Assembly (NCBI GenBank): GCA_965603825.1
Contig: CBFDEM010000062.1
Span: 434,001 to 498,000, forward strand
Origin: Blepharisma stoltei ATCC 30299
Taxonomy: Eukaryota; Protista; Ciliophora
Direction of reading: 5' to 3'
DNA length: 64,000 bases
The stretch's first letter is position 1; the number at the start of each line of letters is the position of its first letter. Of this stretch, positions 11,725 through 21,110 are shown piece by piece. The position numbers and the translations under genes are program-made. Under the pieces are notes generated by a model. The model saw only the letters and a program-made list of their open reading frames with translations. It had not been told where the DNA came from and ran no database searches.

Positions 11725-13257
11725 TTAGCCGCGGCCTTTTTTATTAGAACTAATTTTTTGCGTTTTTCTCTTTTTCTTCACTATAGCTTCCCATTCTTTT
11801 CGTTTCTGTATGGCTTCGTGTATCATTTTTCTGTATTCAGCTTCCGTTATCACATAATTTGGCTTAGGTCTTGGAGGCAAACTTGGCCCTTGAAGCTTTA
11901 CATTGTTAAGCACTGCTTGAGCTTCTAGTTTATACAGATTTTTTGTAAACTCTTGCTTTAATAATTTGCATTCTTCATTATATATTTTTAACCTTTCTCT
12001 ATACTCATTCATTCTCATCTTAAGTATGTTCATAATTTTGAAATCTTTTACTGAGTCTGGAACGGATGATCTCCCTTTAATTGCTTCAAAACTAATGCGC
12101 TTTTCAAGCTCTGATGGTGGAATTTTTCGCTTTTTTATTCTACTCTCAATATACATTTTGTATTCTACTTTATTTCAGAGCAATCTTTTAATTATTAATG
12201 CACTTTTCCTTTGAATAAAAATAGATCTCATGGTACGTTGTATAAAAATAACTTTATTAATAAAAGATTTCATCAGTTTTGCAATTTGCTCCTCAGCAAG
12301 AACTCTTTCGCATATATCTACAGTCATTTCTGCCCATTTGGTTCGAATTTTTTCTGTTCACTTTAGAAATATTGGTAAATGTTTTTTTAAAGTTTTAAAA
12401 GCTTTTGAGATCCTTATTTTCTCCAAAATTATTTTGAACTTCCCAATTGATCTGCAAAAATTCATAAGCCATACAAGCACCTTGCTCGATCTTCTATGTA
12501 AATCTTTTCTTTCGCTTATTTGGCGACGAATATTATTTGCAGACCAAAAAATAGTGTAAAGCACCGACCAAGCTTTAGCAATCGAGAGTATTTCATATTT
12601 TTTAAGCTTTATTTCATATCTCCTTTCCTTTGACTGCAATTTCAATAATTTTTCTAACTTATTCTTTGTATAAATCATTTGTTTTTTTTCCTTAATTTCG
12701 AGAATTTTTGCAGAATCAGATTTTGCTTTGTCTCTCAAATGTCTTATTCTTTCACTTGGGAGATGTTTTTTCATGTCTTTATTTTCGTTTAAAATTTCTT
12801 GGTTTTTATCTAAATCACTGAAATTCAATTTTGGAACTAATGTTTGAGTTAGATTATTGGAAAACCTGGCGATTGTGGAAAAATGAAAGGAAGGCCCATT
12901 AAATGTATTCAGGTCATAATGATAATGCCCAGGACCTAATTTGCTTGAAGCAATTGTTTTCATACTGTAAGTATTTGCGAAAAGTAATTGAACAGAGCTA
13001 GAACGAAATGAGTCTGTGGAGTCTTTTTTGCGATGAATTCTTATATTATCTTGACTCTCACTGATAGAGTTATCATTTCGAGATTTATATCTATTGTCCC
13101 TGTTTAATCTTTCTGTATTGGCAATGTAGGGTTTCAGCTTTATTAATTGCAATTTTTTTAGCTCCTTTAAAGGCGACGATCTATTTATATGGGAGTTTAT
13201 GGCTTCTTGGCACTCTGCAATAAAGTTTTCACTGCTTAGAGAATCACTTGGCATCAT
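11725..13257 (-). CDS. Basic uncharacterised protein with one PGP/SHIPPO-like motif and an IQ-like segment, 510 aa
   Basis: ORFs 12358..13257 and 11725..12156 are in one frame via two UGA. Motifs 'LGPGHY...GPSFHFS' and 'VIFIQRTMR'. Confidence 0.7.
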
Positions 13258-13423
13258 TTTATCAACTCAAAACTTTATTAATACTTAGTCAAAAATGGAA
13301 TAAATTAGTTATTTCGCCTAAGATAAAACAGAAAAAGAGTATAAGATTATTTATAAGAAATATAAGTAATTCAAAAGACTTTTATAAAAAACCAGAAATT
13401 TTGTGATAATTAATGTTGCCAAT

Positions 13424-16306
13424 TTAATTATTATTCAAAATTTTACCTTTGGGTGCTGGAATTTTTGAACGACCTTTAGGCTGAATTAAAAATGGAGCTT
13501 GCGACTCAGAAGTTGGCTTTTTAAATTCAAGAAGAGCTTGAAACTCAGAATTTTTGCATTCAGTTTGAGTTTGTGACTCTGAAGCAGGGTTTTTAAACTC
13601 AGAGCTGCTTTCTAAAATAGATGAGTTTAGCTTTTTCGCATTTGATTCATGCTTTATTATGAATTTAGGCTGAATCTCAAACTCTTGTTTTGCTTTTATT
13701 TCTACAACTTGATTATTGTCTAAATGTTCCTTCACTAGATTTTCTTTTCCTAATTTTGTAACCATTTTCCCTCTAGATTTATTTGCCTCCCGTATCTTCT
13801 TCACTTCTTCTTTAGCAATTTTATTAACAACCCTATACTTTGGCGTTTCAATTTCAGCTTGCTCCTTGATTTCTCTCTTATCTATTTTATTTACAATTTC
13901 TGCTATCTCAACTTTTAAATTTAATCTTCCACTTTCTTCATTTTTATTAGAATGCATTTTGGAATTATTTTCTATAATTTTGTTGAGCTCTCCATTTTCT
14001 CCTTTTTTAGTAACTTGTATTTTTGTTTTGAATTCTAGGGGTTTGCTTGAGTCTTCTTTAACTTTTTTGATTATATGAATTTTTGTTTTTGTTTCGAGCG
14101 GTTTCTTGAAAACCTGGCTATCTTCTTTTTTTGCTACTAGTGTTCGATTTTTATTTTCAACTGGCTTTTTGAATTCTTCTAGCTCTGCTTTTTTGCTTTT
14201 GATTTCTACTGCTCTCTTAAATTCTTTTTCTATCTCTGTTTTGCTGGATATTGATGGTTTATTTTTTGGCTCTAAAAGTTTCTTTCTATTAAAATCTGTT
14301 GAAGTTTTATTTACAATTTCAAGTTGCATCTTTGAGACCTCGAGTTCAGTTTTGCTAGACTGAGCTTTATGCTTCGTTATAATGCTTTCTTGCTTCTTTT
14401 TTTTTACTTCTGTTTCTGTTTTTATAGCTCCTGCTTTTGCTTTTGAAATATTCAAATCCTGAGATTTCTTAAGATTTATCAGTTCTTTTCTTAAATTCTC
14501 AACCTCTTCAATACTTGATTTGTCCTTTACTTTAATTTTATTCATCAAAGTACTCAATTTGGTGTCCCTTTCTTTAATTCCTTTCTCCAATTCATCAATC
14601 TCTTTCCCCATTTTTTCTAATTTCCCCACAAGCATAGCTTTCTCATCTCTTTCTTTTCCAAGTAATTTTAAAGTTTTTTCGAGCTCTTGGCTTGTTTTAT
14701 TTCTTTTAACTACCCAATCAAGATCAACAGACTTTAATCGAGAGCCAAGCTCAAGTGTACAGATTGCCTCATTGTAATTTTCTATTTCTGGGCTACAATT
14801 CATAATAGCATTCACGTCAGTTTCAGTTTCTCCTAGGGTTGGCTTTAGAACTTTTGTTAGCATAGAGTTTCGATAAGGAATGTGTGACTGCTTGCTTTCT
14901 AATGCACCAATTACATCAACTAATGCAGAGAGAGATTTATTTATTTGGACTGTTTCTTTTAATGTGTCTCCTTTAGTTTGACTTTTATTAAGCCTTTCAC
15001 TTCCTGCAAGATCGACAAACTGAATTGTTCCTTCGTAATTTCTGAATGAAATTATTAAGGTGAAAACCATGTGACTTCTTGATGAGTTCTCATTTGACTG
15101 TGTTGATTTAGTAATTCGTTTAGAAAAAGCTTCGTTTACTGTTCTAATCACTTCTGGCACCCAATTGCCTTCAAACTTCATGTCAGCTATATTTACATTT
15201 TCCATCCAATTTTTGATGTTAGGCTCTTGTCTGAGTAAATTCTTTATTTGCTCGTTATAGATTTCAATACATTGTATAGATACTTTGGTTTCTTCGCATT
15301 TCAGCAATTTACTGAGATGCGATAAAGATTCTGCTATTAATCCGCTCATTGTGTGCGTCTTGCCTGATCCAGTCTGTCCATACGCTAATATACAAGTCCT
15401 ACCACCCAGACTGACTTTTTCAATACTCGGCATAATTTCTTGAAACACTTCATTTGTGCTGGCGTTCTGTCCAAACACTTTTTCAAAAGAAAAAGTTTTC
15501 CGCTGATTTTTCAGTTTTTCAACTGTCGGATTTGTTTGGATTTCCCCAGAAAAACATGTCAAACTGCAAGGCTTTAACTTATTTTGTGCTGGTCTAATCC
15601 TAACTAGCACTTTAATTTGTGCCTTTTTCGGCTCAGGAAAGGACAAACTGGACTGCATACTTCTCGGAGTAAAAGCTGAAGAATGATTGAGGGATATAGA
15701 ATTTTCTTTTTGCTCTAGGAGTTTTTGGAGCTCGTCCCTTTGAAACAGAAGTTCTGAAACTTCTTTTTCAAGTGAGCTTACTTGATTCATGTCAGCTTGA
15801 GATCGTAAAGATTCTATTTCTTGACTTAGTTCATTGCATTGATCTTTAAGCCTTTGAATTTCAATTTCTGTTTGTATTTTGTATTCGGATAGCTCTTCTT
15901 GATATAATATAGAATTTTCCTCAGCTTGATAGAGCTTTTCTTCTAAATCTTGCTTTGAAAACTCCAATGCCCTTACTGTGTTTTCCCATTGATCATTTAA
16001 CTGTTCTAGAGCTCGTTTTTGTTCTTCACATTTTTTTAGAGTGCTTTTTAATTTTTCCAGTTCCCCTTGATATCACGCTAACTCTTTTTCATCTTTATCA
16101 TACTTTTGTTTTATATGACTTAAAGATTCCTTAAGTTCACCGATTTTCCTCAAGGCATTTTCAAGCTTTTCTTGCTTTTCTGTAATTTCAGCTTCAAGGG
16201 CCTCTTCGTATTCTTTAGCTTGCTCTTGAAATCTAATTAGGGGTTACTCTTGGTATTCTTGTCTTATAATTTGTATATCAGCTTCTTGTGTTTCTTGAAT
16301 TTCCAT
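13424..16306 (-). CDS. Kinesin (kinesin-14-like motor, centrally placed) with N-terminal NudE/NDE1-like coiled coil, 955 aa (one intron)
   Basis: Motor motifs IKVLVRIRP, AYGQTGSGKT, IEIYNE, NENSSRSH, DLAGSER, INKSLSAL, HIPYRNS. The frame extends to ATG 16306 through one UGA and intron 16233-16247. Confidence 0.88.
16233..16247 (-). other. 15-nt spliceosomal intron GTAACCCCTAATTAG (phase 2)
   Basis: GT-AG ends, A10, in-frame TAA if retained. Removal gives 'RQEYQEFQEQAKEYEE'. Confidence 0.88.
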
Positions 16307-16620
16307 GATTGTTCAAACGAAAGTATCTAATTATTTATATTTTTTAAATAAATAAGCCTTTTTAGTATTAAACAGATAATATGGATAGTGCTTTTGATTG
16401 CAGCACTTGGTATGCATAATGTGTAAACTCTTAAAATTATTGAATTCATTGATTAAGCAAATAAAAAAAAATTTTTGAACTGCTAAATAATGGTGATTAT
16501 TATTATTAATTGGTTACAAAAAATCAGTATTCAGAAAAGACGACAAAAATTTGCAAATGTTTGATTAATTTAAAATTTAGTTTATTTAGAACTAAAAAAT
16601 ATATATTTTATGTTATAAAA

Positions 16621-19600
16621 CTAATCATTGTCTTTTTCTTGCTCTTTTCGAATTTGTATTGAGAATTTCATGATTTTATCTGAAACTGAAGGCCAAAGAA
16701 CTTTTTTTAATATTTGAACTCCATAATCTAATGTAAAAACAAAGCCAATTGCAACTAAAATGCAAACATAGTAATATTGTGTGGTGAGCATCTGATAAAG
16801 CGTTTTTGCAGTTGGAAGAGTAGTAAATGGGTCATAAACTACAATAAAAATGAAATAGCAGAGTATGCTTGTCCCTAGAATTGCAATATAATGATAAATG
16901 GACCATAGTTTTGTGTGAAGACCAAGCTTAAAATTAACAACAAAAATAATGCAAGAAAAAGAAGTCACAGATAGACCCCACTGGCTATAATTATAGCCTC
17001 TGCTATTCATAATGCCTTCTTCACTTGCATATAGAGGGATAAAGAAAACAGCAACTGCGTGAATATAACCCATTAAATTTCATGTCCAAAAGTGGAAAGG
17101 AGTAAATATCCGATTATCTCTCCCAACTTCATATACTTTTGGAATGAGGTGTCTTAATAAATCTTTTTTAGTTTGAGCTGTTTGTCCCACTTCTGATCTT
17201 TTTGGGATTTCTATGTCTCTTTCGAAAAGAGCTCTCATTAGCAGAGGCAGCGCAGTAAAAATCAGATTATAAAACGTGATATATCAGTCATCATAAAATG
17301 CTTGTCCACTGTATGCACAATAAAACCCAAAGAAAAAGTGAGGCATAGTAAAGACTAAGTTTTTATAGAAAAAATACATAATCATCTCACTTTGCCTTAT
17401 ATAGTTAAATCTCCCATGGACAAGAAGCAACTCTCATAGAAATTTAAACTCCCCAATAGAATAATCGCTCGCCTGTACAGCTTGCATTCCTTCTTCTCCA
17501 TAAATTCCTACCCCTATGTGGGCTTCCAAAATCATTGAAACATCATTAGCACCATCTCCTACCGCAAGTGTTTTTATTCCAGTATTATCTTTCATAAGTT
17601 TCACGATTTCTCGTTTTTCTCCAGGTGTTACTCTACAGCAAATAACAGTTTTGCATACCAGTGCCATTTTTAAAAACAGCTGCTTTATTTCTCTGGCTTT
17701 TTGAAGCGTAACCTGGCTTTTTGAGAGCTCTGGGTATTTTGTTATTTTAATGGGATCCCCTTCATCGAATAACACCTTTTCTAACGCTCCACCTTCTATT
17801 AATAAAGCTGCGGGCTTGTCTTTTTTCTCACTTTCAAATCTGCTGTTTATATATCTCATGCATTCTAAGCAATCGTCTAAAGATAAATTTCCTGGACATC
17901 TTTCGACAATCATGTTCTCATCAACTAATGAGCAGGTTTTGCCAATATTTTCAGCAGTTTCTAGCTTATCACCAGTTAGCATTCAAACGTTGATTCCAGC
18001 TGAAAGAAGTGCTTGTATAGTTTGAGGGACATCATCTTGCAGAGAATCTTCAACAGCAGTGCAGCCTAATAAGAATAAATCTTGCTCAATTTCTTCTGCA
18101 AGCTTATCAATTCTTTCTTCTCTTCCTTCAATTGAAGTGCTTGCTTCATCAAATCGTCGCTTTCACTCTATATAGTTTGCTTCCTCTAATATTTTATACG
18201 TAAACATCAGTGTACGGTATCCTCTTTCTGAATATGTCTGTAAATCATTAGAAACCTTATCAAGATAAGCTTTAAGATTTTCCTGAGATAAACGCTTCTT
18301 TATCTCGCTATCTGCACCTTTTGTGTAAAGAATCATTTTATTGGTCTGCAAATCTTTAACTATAACCGAGTTTCTTTTTCTGTCAGAATTGAATTCCAGC
18401 GTAGCACATTTTTCAAACCGTAGTAAATCGCATTGATCTTCCATGCCAAAGTGAAGTCTCTTTATATCCATAATTCCTGCTTTTAGCTTATCATACTTGT
18501 AGCCTATATGTGCAGCGAAATCAACGAGTACGATTTCATCTGGACTTTGGCCTATATAATTGCTTTCTTTATTTTCATTTTCTTCAATTAAGCATTCGTG
18601 GCAAATCGACATACACTTGACAAATTGGTCAAGCAGCTCTTTCTGGCTATAAAGTCCTTCTTTTCCATAAGACATCTCCATAACCACCGGAGAGCTCAAT
18701 GGAGCGTCTCCATCCTTTCCATATAAATCATTCTCTATTTCTTCAACCTTAAATGTAAAAATAATTTCTTTGGTTTGTCTAGTCACTTTTGAGCTGTATT
18801 GTCGACTGATTAAGAATTGCTTCTCTCCATACATTTTATTCCCCACAGTGCACAGCTTGAATTGCATCCTGTTAGATGTCAAAGTGCCGGTTTTATCAGA
18901 AAAAATATGCTCAATCATTCCAAGCTCTTCATTTAACGAGAATGCAGATACGTGGCAGGGGCGGTCTCTGATAGTACTGTACATCTCCAGATCTTGCTGC
19001 ATAAAGAATCCTTGTGCAATTTTTATAATTTCCAAGGAGACAATTAATGAAATTGGAAGCATAGTATTTAAAAGTAAAAAGTAAGTAAAATAGTTCAAGA
19101 AGCCTTGAAGACCTGCGCTGTAGTCAGGATCTGACAAGTAGTAGTGGTCATCGTATTCTTGATAGCTCCACACTCCATATAAAATAGCCATAATAACACA
19201 AAATCCAGTCTGGGCTGCCAAAATGCCTACAATATATTGATTAGTCTTTCTTTCAATAAAGCTCTGCTTTGATTTTCTCGACATGAGGTTTTGCCTTAAT
19301 TTTGTCTCTTTTCCAGTGTAGACAGCTGCTCCAACTATCCATGCAGTGTTTCTCAGAAACGCTCCTGCTAGCAGTAAGTTGTTTTTGTCTAGAGGCTGCT
19401 TTTTATCATTGTACTCCAAAGACCCTGAAAAGTGGTAAAGCCTTGCATTGGGATGCTCACACTCAATAAGTGAAAAAATCCTAATTATATCGTCCTTTCT
19501 CGTGTCATTCATTGTAGCAATGACCGCTTGCCTCGGCTTTAAAGTTTTTTCTCCATCAAGGCTTGACGTTTCAATATAGGCGATTCCATTATCAGCCGAA

Positions 19601-20052
19601 GAAGAAAGCATTACTAGGTCGCATGGAAAAGCTTCATCTTTCTGCACTAAAACTACATTCCCCACTTGCACTTCTTTAAAGGTGGCTTCTTCAAATTTCC
19701 CATTCCGGTAAATCATAGTCTTAGCTGAGTTCGTTTCTTTGTCTGATTTATACCTCAAGTAGTCTTCAAACCCTTCTCTAATCATACTAACTGCCAAAAT
19801 AAAAACAACTGCTACCAAGCCTGATCAAGACCTTAAAGGAGTAATTTGAGGAATCGATTGAAGAATTACAATGATGAGGAAATACACATTTGGAAGTCTT
19901 TTATATTGTTCCAAAAGACTCAGTGGGAAAAAGGTCACTAGGTTGTATTTGGTCGTGCTTACATAGTTTGACTGGAAATCATGGATTTGGTTGAGTTCAA
20001 AACCATTGACATAAAGAATGCGCTTTGTATTTGAATCAGAAACTTCGGCCAT
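16621..20052 (-). CDS. P4-type ATPase (phospholipid flippase), 1143 aa
   Basis: TTKYNLVTFFP, LDGEKTLK, PISL, SDKTGTLT, NV(UGA=W)MLTGDKLETA, CCRVTP, GDGANDVSMI, FFYKN. All fragments are in one frame via UGA codons. Confidence 0.95.
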
Positions 20053-20117: not shown

Positions 20118-21110
20118 TTAAGCTTCTGAGACAATCCGAGATTTACTTATTTCAAATACTCGCACAGTGTCGTCTCCACTACATATAGCTGCCCTATTTG
20201 ATGTATTGGCAAAGTCAATTCCATAAACTGATTTAGTTAGGTTCGAAAGCACAGCAAATGGTCTCAGAGTTAATGAGTCATAAAAGTAAGCCTCGTTACT
20301 GCCTGATCCCCCCACAGCAAAAATAGCGCCACTATCAAACTTGCTGTATTGAGCAGCATAAAGCATGCAAGGCTTATTTTCGTTTCGAAGAGTAGATGTG
20401 AATACATTTTCTCCATTAGGAAGAGTCCAGATTTGGATTTGGTCATTATTTGTATAGCTTCCTGTTAATAGTTCATTTCCTTTCACATCAATAGCGTCTC
20501 CACATATATGAGGGCCATAAATACACTTTTGAACTCGACGGGTTCTGACATCCCATATCAAAACATTATTATCCCATCCACCACTGATAACAGTTTGGTC
20601 TCCAAACCATCTGACTTTAAATATCCTATTTCCGTGTCCAGATCTTTCTCCTTCGCCAGGCAGCATATCAGAAATAAGCGTTTTCGTTGACTCATCATAA
20701 ACTCGAACGTGCATATCTTCACATCCAACTGCGAAATATTTGCCTTCGGAGTCATAATTGACAGAAAGCACTTGGCTGTTTTCCACACCTATTGTATGCA
20801 GGATTTTTCCTGATGTAGAATGCCAATGGATTATATATCCTTCAGCTGTGGTTGCGACTAGAACATGCTTGGTTTTAGCTTGAGATATTAGGGGTCGGAA
20901 TTGAATTGATGTAACTGGTAAGGCATCTATTCCTATTCGACAATTTAAGGTTCTGATCCAGTTCCCGGTAGCTGCAGAATAAATTTTTATAGTTCCATTT
21001 GAGCCTGCTGTCGCAATTTGCGAATCATCCATGCTCCATTTCACAGCAAAGACATTTGCATCTAAATCAACTATTGTTCGTTCATGCTCTATTACACGCT
21101 CTTGATCCAT
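20118..21110 (-). CDS. WD40-repeat protein, 330 aa
   Basis: 'GHGNRIFKVRW...ISGGWDNNVLIWDVR...IYGPHICGDAID' and further WD repeats. Confidence 0.88.
   Translation of the reverse strand: MDQERVIEHERTIVDLDANVFAVKWSMDDSQIATAGSNGTIKIYSAATGNWIRTLNCRIGIDALPVTSIQFRPLISQAKTKHVLVATTAEGYIIHWHSTSGKILHTIGVENSQVLSVNYDSEGKYFAVGCEDMHVRVYDESTKTLISDMLPGEGERSGHGNRIFKVRWFGDQTVISGGWDNNVLIWDVRTRRVQKCIYGPHICGDAIDVKGNELLTGSYTNNDQIQIWTLPNGENVFTSTLRNENKPCMLYAAQYSKFDSGAIFAVGGSGSNEAYFYDSLTLRPFAVLSNLTKSVYGIDFANTSNRAAICSGDDTVRVFEISKSRIVSEA

What the first reader, a model, noticed from the sequence alone, without database searches (positions are those of the whole stretch)
15780..16306. Kinesin fused to a NudE/NDE1-like dynein-LIS1-binding coiled coil
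Seen: behind a 15-nt intron and one UGA, the kinesin has an N-terminus the ORF track misses: 'RQEYQEFQEQAKEYEEALEAEI...KRALEQLNDQWENTVRALEFSKQDLEEKLYQAEENSILYQEEL...EIQRLKDQCNELSQEI'. Established: NudE/NDE1/NDEL1 begin with a coiled coil of the form 'EEL.EFQE.SREYEAELE...IRELEQANDDLERAKRA...[22 protein letters not shown]...VQRLKDE.RDLRQEL'. Its early acidic part binds dynein intermediate chain and its later part binds LIS1. By eye, the motif order and spacing agree over about 170 aa, more than generic heptads would. The coil is followed by an intact kinesin-14-like motor and a long K/E-rich tail. Inference: one polypeptide may couple a kinesin motor to dynein/LIS1 recruitment, acting as a built-in dynein-delivery or motor-coordination device. 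I know of no described NudE-kinesin fusion.
Basis: partly seen in the sequence, partly recalled or inferred. Interest (0 to 1): 0.8.

Follow-up and report, generated by a model that had tools for sequence, protein, structure and literature searches.

The report
NudE coiled coil fused to kinesin
This ciliate gene joins the front half of NudE, the protein that normally brings LIS1 to the dynein motor, to a kinesin-14-type motor. One chain could therefore link the two opposing microtubule motor systems, although no binding has been tested.

Summary
The gene lies on the minus strand at 13424-16306 in Blepharisma stoltei macronuclear DNA. It has one 15-nt intron (16233-16247) and one UGA=Trp codon (16073-16075), and it encodes the deposited 955-aa protein P0001.

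- **NudE homology.** Residues 6-169 belong to the NudE/NDE1/NDEL1 coiled-coil family and are not a generic coil. A profile built only from animal and fungal NudE scores them 93.5 bits, against a maximum of 19.5 for 1000 heptad-preserving shuffles. hhalign gives probability 99.8% and E 3e-28.
- **Reciprocal search.** A profile built only from the ciliate kinesin N-termini finds NDEL1 first in the PDB (E 7e-12). It also retrieves hundreds of NudE proteins from 1.84 billion sequences.
- **Conserved residues.** The NDEL1 residues needed for dynein binding (E36, E39, E48, E52) and LIS1 binding (E119, R130) are all kept.
- **Motor and tail.** The motor is intact and kinesin-14-like. The tail ends in an SxIP-type motif.
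- **Expression.** RNA contigs splice the intron and bridge the coil and the motor.
- **Distribution.** The architecture is shared by 3 paralogs, by Stentor, by more than 40 unnamed sequences, and by a stramenopile alga.
- **Genomic context.** Blepharisma has LIS1, EB1 and four short stand-alone NudE-like genes that lack the LIS1-site residues.

Binding to dynein or LIS1 is inferred, not shown. The scan has already reported paralogs of this gene on other DNA of this genome (s1-646643, s1-629541).

The parts
13424..16306 (-). Whole coding region (two exons, stop included) of a 955-aa NudE-coil/kinesin-14-type protein (= P0001)
   Evidence: The spliced model equals the deposited B. stoltei protein.
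16248..16306 (-). Exon 1 (M1 to Q19 plus two bases of E20). A stop lies two codons upstream of the ATG.
   Evidence: RNA contig X1 record 8 reaches 16305.
16233..16247 (-). 15-nt GT..AG intron, at the same codon position in all three paralogs
   Evidence: 15 letters are left out at 16233 in an RNA contig.
16073..16075 (-). In-frame TGA read as Trp (W73)
   Evidence: The deposited protein has W here. Code support.
15785..16291 (-). NudE/NDE1/NDEL1-homologous coiled coil (aa 6-169)
   Evidence: Atlas neighbours.
16193..16258 (-). Acidic motif QEYQEFQEQAKEYEEALE. E17, E20, E29 and E33 correspond to NDEL1 E36, E39, E48 and E52 (dynein-binding residues). The motif spans the intron.
   Evidence: Alignment. 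Mutational data in PMC3101096.
15896..16063 (-). Equivalent of the NDEL1 LIS1-binding segment (aa 77-132). E96 (16004-16006) corresponds to E119 and R107 (15971-15973) to R130. This is the most conserved stretch of the coil in the family.
   Evidence: and for the residues.
15620..15784 (-). End of the coil plus a Ser/Pro-rich linker (aa 170-224) between the coil and the motor core
   Evidence: Sequence read directly.
14726..15619 (-). Kinesin motor domain (aa 225-522). P-loop GQTGSGKT is at 15356-15379, switch I SSRSH at 15071-15085, and switch II DLAGSE at 14996-15013.
   Evidence: Pfam Kinesin 1.6e-69 and Microtub_bd 5.4e-22. Best PDB hits are Kar3, KIFC3 and KCBP. Coordinates.
14372..14725 (-). 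Conserved post-motor segment and heptad-rich region (aa 523-640; family motif RKNLKNEEVERTLxLLEKER)
   Evidence: Family sequences. Read by eye; no coiled-coil predictor was run.
13427..14371 (-). K/E-rich tail (aa 641-955; 20% K, 14% E), much longer than in the paralogs
13457..13468 (-). SKIP within PKGRSKIPAPKGK, an SxIP-type (EB1-binding-like) motif near the C-terminus
   Evidence: 34 of 48 family members have [ST]x[IL]P in their last 45 residues. EB1 genes are present.

Best explanation
Shown: this is an expressed Blepharisma stoltei gene for a single 955-aa chain with these parts in order. (i) A genuine NudE-family parallel coiled coil (aa 6-169). (ii) A Ser/Pro-rich linker. (iii) A catalytically intact kinesin motor whose nearest relatives are kinesin-14s. 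(iv) A post-motor heptad-rich segment. (v) A K/E-rich tail ending in an SxIP-type motif. It is one of four paralogs, and it belongs to a family that is well supported in heterotrich ciliates. The same architecture also occurs in at least one stramenopile alga.

Inferred: the coil dimerises the motor and keeps the scaffold function of NudE. Its acidic N-terminal part (E17, E20, E29, E33) would bind the dynein intermediate chain. Its strongly conserved middle part (E96, R107) would bind the LIS1 beta-propeller. The kinesin would then carry or anchor dynein-LIS1 on microtubules, and the SxIP motif would add EB1-dependent concentration at growing plus ends. In one polypeptide this would do what budding yeast does with the separate proteins Kip2, Bik1, Bim1 and Pac1. 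The direction of the motor is unknown.
For: - **Gene model.**. It is identical to the deposited P0001.
- **Expression.** Contig X1 spans 15958-16305 with the 15-nt intron removed. Contig X3 spans 14397-16170 and bridges the coil and the motor. There is no coverage of the 16359-16592 spacer.
- **NudE homology by single sequence.** phmmer puts only NudE-family chains on top of the PDB: 2v71 at 2e-5, then 7e1t and 2v66. A paralog aligns colinearly to NDEL1 chain residues 36-184.
- **NudE homology by profile.** The family profile hits NDEL1 at 7e-12, and the next non-NudE hit is at 3e-3. The same profile against 1.84e9 proteins gives 551 hits. Of 100 hits scanned, 79 carry Pfam NUDE_C. hhalign against 20 canonical NudE proteins gives probability 99.8% and E 3e-28.
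- **Functional residues.** All family-invariant NudE residues in the dynein-site and LIS1-site regions are kept except S44, which is Ala here but Ser in the paralogs. Their roles are documented in PMC3101096. The family's invariant columns cluster in the LIS1-site region.
- **Partners in the genome.** Two LIS1 genes are present and seven loci carry an EB1 domain.
- **Motor class.**
- **Analogous system.** PMC4046564 (title and abstract only).
Against: - No binding was tested. The single complex prediction (coil dimer plus LIS1 propeller) gave no verdict.
- The NudE C-terminal region is absent.
- No dynein intermediate chain N-terminal helix was detected in the genome with the short Pfam model PF11540. 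This is inconclusive.
- The genome also has four stand-alone NudE-like genes that could serve dynein instead.
- This paralog is the most divergent of the four, with a long branch of 0.87.
- A kinesin-14-type N-terminal neck next to the motor core is not evident, so direction cannot be predicted. A 'delivery to plus ends' role therefore cannot be inferred either.
Confidence: 0.6

Rival explanations
1. The coil descends from NudE but now serves only as the dimerisation stalk of the kinesin, or binds some other partner. It no longer binds dynein or LIS1.
For: Coiled coils are often reused as stalks. The NudE C-terminal region is gone (NUDE_C only 17.6 bits, below the cut-off). Separate NudE-like genes exist. 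The complex prediction gave no support, which is no evidence either way.
Against: A stalk needs only the heptad core positions. Yet the charged residues that define the NudE family and bind LIS1 and dynein (E36, E39, E48, E52, R116, E119, N122, D123, E126, R130, S135) are kept, and they are invariant or nearly so across the kinesin family. The LIS1-site region is the best conserved part of the coil.
Confidence: 0.25
2. The coil binds LIS1 but not dynein. LIS1 would then regulate or be sequestered by this kinesin, or the protein would act as a microtubule-bound LIS1 store rather than a motor-motor coupler.
For: The LIS1-site region is more strongly conserved than the N-terminal acidic part. The stand-alone NudE-like genes keep the acidic N-terminal motif but lack the LIS1-site residues, which suggests the two functions were divided between paralogs.
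Against: The four glutamates required for dynein binding in Ndel1 are all present here. No data separate the two activities.
Confidence: 0.1
3. The resemblance to NudE is a chance similarity between E/K/L-rich heptad repeats.
For: Coiled coils give many weak cross-hits (see the low-scoring Pfam list).
Against: The score is 93.5 bits against a maximum of 19.5 for 1000 heptad-preserving shuffles. hhalign gives E 3e-28. Only NudE chains top the PDB list. 79 of 100 reciprocal hits carry NUDE_C.
Confidence: 0.01
4. A gene-model artefact: a NudE gene and a kinesin gene lie next to each other and were merged.
For: None found. In principle the reading needs an intron and a reassigned stop codon.
Against: From the LIS1-site region into the motor the frame is open without any stop (ORF 13424-15967). 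One RNA contig spans 14397-16170. More than 50 relatives have the same architecture, and the paralogs share the same intron position.
Confidence: 0.02

Closest known systems
NudE / NDE1 / NDEL1 (dynein-LIS1 scaffold; structure 2V71)
   Same: The N-terminal ~165-residue coiled coil is homologous and colinear. It has the conserved FQxxSKExE...LE acidic motif and the RxLExxNDxxE...R...S LIS1-site signature.
   Different: There is no NudE C-terminal region: Pfam NUDE_C is below its cut-off and matches only the coil part. In its place are a kinesin motor, a second coil and a long tail. Canonical NudE has no motor or enzymatic domain.
Kinesin-14 (Kar3, Ncd, KIFC3; plant KCH/KIN-14 with an internal motor)
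   Same: The motor sequence is closest to kinesin-14s and its ATPase motifs are intact. As in plant KCH kinesins, the motor is internal, with coiled coil on both sides.
   Different: The motor is not C-terminal. A Ser/Pro-rich linker, not a neck helix, precedes the motor core. The N-terminal domain is NudE, not a CH domain or a microtubule-binding tail. Directionality is unknown.
Yeast Kip2-Bik1-Bim1-Pac1(LIS1) pathway that carries dynein to microtubule plus ends (PMC4046564)
   Same: Functional analogy only: a kinesin, an EB1 link and LIS1 act together to position dynein.
   Different: In yeast these are separate proteins held together non-covalently, and the kinesin is not a kinesin-14. Here the NudE scaffold, the motor and an EB1-type motif sit on one chain. 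No experiment supports the analogy yet.
Stand-alone NudE-like genes of the same genome (G000 C33:701175, C50:7889, C51:861215, C51:236459)
   Same: They have the same N-terminal acidic motif (YQEMSKTLEEEIERELE) and the distal QRLKDQ segment.
   Different: They are short (about 235 aa by eye) and have no motor. A C-terminal SALGMVxxLLSDLNGK segment recalls, from memory, the NDEL1 C-terminal helix. They lack the LIS1-site residues R116, E119, N122, D123, R130 and S135.

Membership tests
NudE/NDE1/NDEL1 | N-terminal long coiled coil homologous to NDEL1 residues ~8-190 | tested here: met
   hhalign probability 99.8%, E 3e-28, 164 columns. PDB profile hit 2v71 at 7e-12. 93.5 bits against shuffle controls.
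NudE/NDE1/NDEL1 | Acidic residues needed for dynein binding (Ndel1 E36/E39 and E48/E52) | tested here: met
   E17, E20, E29 and E33 align to them. Roles are from PMC3101096. This shows sequence conservation only.
NudE/NDE1/NDEL1 | LIS1-binding segment with E119 and R130 | tested here: met
   E96 and R107 are kept, together with R116, N122, D123, E126 and S135 equivalents. This is the best conserved part of the coil in the family.
NudE/NDE1/NDEL1 | C-terminal NUDE_C region (Pfam PF04880) | tested here: not met
   PF04880 scores 17.6 bits against a cut-off of 30.9, and the match covers only profile positions 3-107, which are the end of the coil. A kinesin motor follows instead.
NudE/NDE1/NDEL1 | Physical binding to LIS1 and dynein | not testable with these tools
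   The complex prediction of the coil dimer with B. stoltei LIS1 gave no verdict. It needs biochemistry.
Kinesin superfamily | Motor domain with P-loop, switch I and switch II | tested here: met
   Pfam Kinesin 1.6e-69. GQTGSGKT, SSRSH and DLAGSE are present.
Kinesin-14 | Motor sequence groups with kinesin-14 members | tested here: met
   Best PDB hits are Kar3, KIFC3 and KCBP. Outside its own clade, all nearest named proteins are KIN-14 or KIFC2/3. No tree containing the other kinesin families was made.
Kinesin-14 | C-terminal position of the motor | tested here: not met
   The motor is aa 225-522 of 955. It is internal, as in plant KCH kinesins.
Kinesin-14 | Neck coiled coil directly abutting the N-terminal side of the motor core, and minus-end-directed motility | tested here: inconclusive
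   A Ser/Pro-rich stretch precedes β1 (…SLSFPEPKKAQIKVLVRIRP). The expected neck motif is recalled from memory only. Motility cannot be tested here.
SxIP (EB1-binding) microtubule tip localisation signal | [ST]x[IL]P in a basic, Ser/Pro-rich unstructured region | tested here: met
   PKGRSKIPAPKGK at aa 942-945. 34 of 48 family members have the motif in their last 45 residues. EB1-domain genes are present. Binding was not tested.

The most novel reading that the evidence does not exclude
A kinesin-14 lineage, possibly of single and ancient origin within the SAR group, uses NudE itself as its cargo-binding tail. On this reading one chain tip-tracks through EB1 and carries or anchors dynein-LIS1. 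In heterotrich ciliates it has taken over the LIS1-recruiting half of NudE function, because the stand-alone NudE paralogs have lost the LIS1 site. This would be a hard-wired kinesin-dynein coupler.
Probability: 0.3. Interest if true: 0.85.

Novelty: new variant of a known kind. Interest (0 to 1): 0.72.

Why it matters
How cells position dynein and coordinate it with kinesins is an open question. In the known cases this is done by loose multi-protein assemblies such as Kip2/Bik1/Bim1/Pac1 in yeast and kinesin-1-dependent dynein transport in neurons and fungi. A natural protein that fuses the dynein/LIS1 scaffold to a kinesin motor would be a minimal, directly testable coupler. It would also show that the NudE coiled coil can act as a portable module. 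The apparent split of the dynein-site and LIS1-site signatures between fused and stand-alone paralogs offers a natural separation-of-function experiment. Stentor, which has the same family, allows RNAi.

Tried and rejected
- **Complex prediction.** The coil dimer (P0001 60-172, two copies) with the B. stoltei LIS1 propeller (P0296 95-417) scored 0.09 against a mark of 0.34. The tool's verdict is no answer, so this counts neither for nor against binding.
- **Pfam NUDE_C in the genome.** Only sub-threshold hits. The model mostly covers the C-terminal region, which these proteins lack.
- **LisH search for LIS1.** The strict threshold found only TBL1-like and GID8-like genes. LIS1 appeared only at the lenient threshold.
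- **Dynein IC N-terminus, PF11540.** No credible hit. The one weak match is in an unrelated 679-aa ORF. This is inconclusive.
- **Motor tree (quick method).** The heterotrich clade has 100% support, but its relation to the other NudE-kinesins is unresolved. The AU test does not reject one clade of all NudE-bearing kinesins (p 0.62). That does not prove a single origin.
- **Tandem repeats in the tail.** Nothing of note.
- **Literature searches.** None returned a paper on a NudE-kinesin fusion. The library is incomplete, so this is weak evidence of novelty.
- **Generic coiled coil and merged gene model.** Both were considered and rejected (see rival explanations).
Full report
**1. What is in the sequence**

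On the minus strand an ATG at 16306 opens a frame that is preceded by a stop two codons upstream. After 19 codons comes GA|GTAACCCCTAATTAG|A, a 15-nt GT..AG intron at 16233-16247. Removing it keeps the frame and gives ...RQEYQE-FQEQAKEYEEALEAEI....

One in-frame TGA lies at 16073-16075. From there the frame is open for 882 codons down to the stop at 13424-13426. The genome is 41.46 Mb in 64 contigs.

A protein search returned a deposited 955-aa 'unnamed protein product [Blepharisma stoltei]', P0001. In a local script, my spliced model with TGA read as Trp is identical to it.

Two observations support TGA=Trp. TGA codons in the paralogs align with a TGG-encoded Trp of this gene. A TGA also sits at a conserved Trp of LIS1.

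Searches used the exon pieces by reference, or the deposited protein id that a tool returned. The joined model was only compared with P0001 inside a script.

**2. Is it expressed as one unit?**

Four runs of one study hold the stretch. When laid on 13200-16700:
- One contig (X1, record 8) covers 15958-16305 with exactly 15 letters left out at 16233, so the intron is spliced and the material is RNA.
- One contig (X3, record 16) runs uninterrupted from 14397 to 16170, from the motor into the NudE-like coil.
- None of the runs covers the spacer 16359-16592.

Contigs cannot give transcript ends.

**3. Is the N-terminus NudE-like beyond generic heptads?**

Yes, by several lines of evidence.
- **Single sequence against the PDB.** phmmer of the post-TGA coil piece against all PDB sequences puts three NudE-family chains on top: NDEL1 2v71 at E 2.1e-5, then NDE1 7e1t and NDEL1 2v66. 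Everything else is at E above 0.2.
- **Paralog coil.** An uninterrupted paralog coil aligns colinearly to NDEL1 chain residues 36-184, E 4.3e-6.
- **Family profile against the PDB.** A profile of 13 kinesin N-termini (A2) hits NDEL1 at 7e-12. The best non-NudE hit, a coronin coiled coil, is at 3e-3.
- **Family profile against 1.84 billion representatives.** It gives 551 hits at E up to 1e-3. Below the family's own members these are animal and fungal NudE proteins. Of 100 such hits scanned, 79 carry Pfam NUDE_C at E up to 1e-5.
- **Profile against profile.** hhalign of A2 against an alignment of 20 canonical NudE N-termini (A3) gives probability 99.8%, E 3.1e-28, over 164 aligned columns.
- **Controls.** The canonical-only profile A3 scores the real N-terminus 93.5 bits and the reversed sequence 10.6. 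It scores 1000 composition shuffles at most -1.0 and 1000 heptad-register-preserving shuffles at most 19.5 (mean -4.2, sd 4.8). The family's post-motor coiled coils score at most 4.5.
- **Atlas look-up.** NudE clusters are among the nearest by features and first by structure. This is a lead only.

**4. Functional residues**

In A3 the invariant columns, in NDEL1 numbering, are S44, E48, L51, R116, E119, N122, D123, E126, R130, S135, E148, Q168, R169, D172, E173 and E180.

Żyłkiewicz et al. 2011 (PMC3101096) report the following:
- Dynein binds Ndel1 residues 8-99.
- E36A/E39A and E48A/E52A impair that binding.
- The LIS1 site lies at about residues 100-155.
- E119A/R130A abolishes LIS1 binding.

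In the alignment this protein has:
- E17, E20, E29 and E33 at positions 36, 39, 48 and 52.
- F21-Q22-E23 at positions 40-42.
- L32 at position 51.
- R93, E96, N99, D100, E103, R107 and S112 at positions 116, 119, 122, 123, 126, 130 and 135.
- Q-R at positions 168-169.
- Ala at S44, although the paralogs have Ser there.

Within the kinesin family all invariant columns lie at or after P0004 residue 86, and most fall in the LIS1-site stretch EEQKRELEHLNDQWENSxRxLEFSKQDLEEKLYQAEE.

**5. The rest of the protein**

Pfam finds Kinesin (1.6e-69) and Microtub_bd (5.4e-22). The P-loop, switch I and switch II are intact.

The best solved relatives are Kar3, KIFC3 and KCBP, ahead of kinesin-1. In the large protein search, every nearest named protein outside the family is a kinesin-14: plant KIN-14A/L/I/H/G with CH domains, KIN-14C/M, and 'kinesin family protein C2/C3'.

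The motor is internal (aa 225-522). It is preceded by a Ser/Pro-rich linker rather than an obvious neck helix. It is followed by a conserved segment (RKNLKNEEVERTLxLLEKER in relatives) and a heptad-rich stretch. Directionality therefore cannot be inferred.

The tail is K/E-rich and ends in PKGRSKIPAPKGK. An [ST]x[IL]P motif, usually SRIP flanked by S, P and K, occurs in the last 45 residues of 34 of 48 family members. This is the form of an SxIP EB1-binding signal (general knowledge). Seven loci with an EB1 domain exist in the genome.

**6. Relatives**

- **Paralogs.** Three paralogs in the genome (C11, C29, C14; P0002, P0004, P0003; 708-713 aa) have the same architecture and the same intron position.
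- **Stentor.** Stentor coeruleus has several members, including SteCoe_27048, 21395, 34447, 19836 and 15192.
- **Unnamed sequences.** More than 40 unnamed metagenomic or run-assembly proteins belong to the family. Some have precomputed PF04880+PF00225 hits.
- **Profile check.** With the canonical-NudE profile, every member of this clade is hit (E 1e-13 to 1e-30). The Chara, diatom, oomycete and plant kinesin-14s in my set are not.
- **Outside ciliates.** Three further kinesins carry a NudE coil. They are P0116 from the stramenopile alga Chrysoparadoxa australica (1165 aa), P0057 (EukProt, 918 aa) and P0136 (1266 aa).
- **Tree.** A quick ML tree of the motors gives the heterotrich clade 100% SH-aLRT support, with this window's protein on a long branch. 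An AU test does not reject a single clade of all NudE-bearing kinesins (p 0.62; the constrained tree is 3.8 lnL units better). A single origin is therefore possible but not shown.
- **Degenerate motors.** Some Stentor relatives keep the NudE coil but have a degenerate motor (P0019 / SteCoe_4327, P0024).

**7. Context in the genome**

The canonical-NudE profile finds the four kinesins first (E 8e-27 to 3e-23). It then finds four short genes (C33:701175, C50:7889, C51:861215, C51:236459; E 2e-15 to 2e-7).

These four encode proteins of about 235 aa (by eye) without a motor. They keep the acidic N-terminal motif and the distal QRLKDQ segment. They do not keep R116, E119, N122, D123, R130 or S135 (aligned exon by exon). 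So stand-alone NudE-like genes exist, but the canonical LIS1-site signature is found only in the kinesin-fused copies.

LIS1 itself is present as two near-identical genes (C9 and C20). One piece aligns residues 1-298 to human LIS1 residues 1-297, E 2e-118. The deposited protein P0296 is named 'Lissencephaly-1 homolog'.

The dynein intermediate chain N-terminus was not detected with the short Pfam model. That is inconclusive. That ciliates have cytoplasmic dynein-1 is general knowledge and was not tested here.

**8. Mechanism**

Shown: the architecture, the homology, residue conservation, expression, family conservation, and the presence of LIS1 and EB1.

Inferred: the coil dimerises the motor and still binds the dynein IC and LIS1, so the kinesin tethers or transports dynein-LIS1. 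The SxIP motif would add EB1-dependent tip localisation.

The closest functional analogue is the reconstituted yeast system in which the kinesin Kip2, with Bik1, Bim1 and Lis1, carries dynein to plus ends (PMC4046564; I saw its title and abstract only).

The main rival is that the coil is only a stalk. The conservation of surface charged residues, which a stalk does not need, argues against it. The one complex prediction gave no verdict and is not used as evidence.

**9. Novelty**

Both modules are well known, but their combination is not described in any paper my searches returned. The proteins sit in databases as unnamed or 'kinesin-like' entries.

The scan's own notes show that paralogs of this gene on other contigs were already reported and followed up, with the same reading (s1-646643, s1-629541). 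I reached the points above from my own tests.

I rate this a new variant of known kinds: a new domain architecture with a plausible new way of coupling motors. Interest is about 0.7.

Noticed in passing
window 13530-13565 (-): RNA contigs of two runs skip 36 nt here. The ends are AG..TT on the + strand, so this is not a GT..AG intron on the gene strand. The same contigs carry several SNPs. The skipped part lies between two similar tail segments (SEFKNPASESQ / LEFKKPTSESQ). It is probably an allelic 12-codon in-frame indel rather than splicing.
   Followed up: partly
window 16621-20052 (-): A large P-type ATPase gene (DKTGTLT and GDGANDV motifs), probably a phospholipid flippase. In the bacterial-code ORF list it is broken into pieces by in-frame TGA codons and probably by tiny introns.
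   Followed up: no
window 20118-21110 (-): A 330-aa WD-repeat protein gene directly upstream of the ATPase. It has no LisH motif and is not LIS1.
   Followed up: no
L021, L022, L023, L024/L025 (G000 C33:701175, C50:7889, C51:861215, C51:236459): Four stand-alone NudE-like genes of about 235 aa, each with one short intron. They keep the dynein-site acidic motif and a C-terminal SALGMVxxLLSDLNGK segment, but lack the LIS1-site residues that the kinesin-fused copies keep.
   Followed up: partly
L028:355-1632 (-) and L029:1459-2709 (+) (G000 C9 and C20): Two nearly identical LIS1 genes, each with one TGA=Trp inside a WD repeat. The neighbouring genes also look duplicated, which suggests a segmental duplication.
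   Followed up: partly
P0019/P0165 (Stentor SteCoe_4327), P0024, P0027, P0033 (SteCoe_23085): Relatives that keep the NudE coil but have a degenerate kinesin domain: no P-loop, switch I or switch II matched my patterns, and P0024 keeps only a Pfam Kinesin remnant. They may be pseudo-motor derivatives of the family.
   Followed up: partly
L013, L014 (G000 C35, C52): LisH + WD40 genes that resemble TBL1-type proteins by eye, and a LisH-containing gene that by eye resembles GID8 (L015). They turned up while I was looking for LIS1.
   Followed up: no
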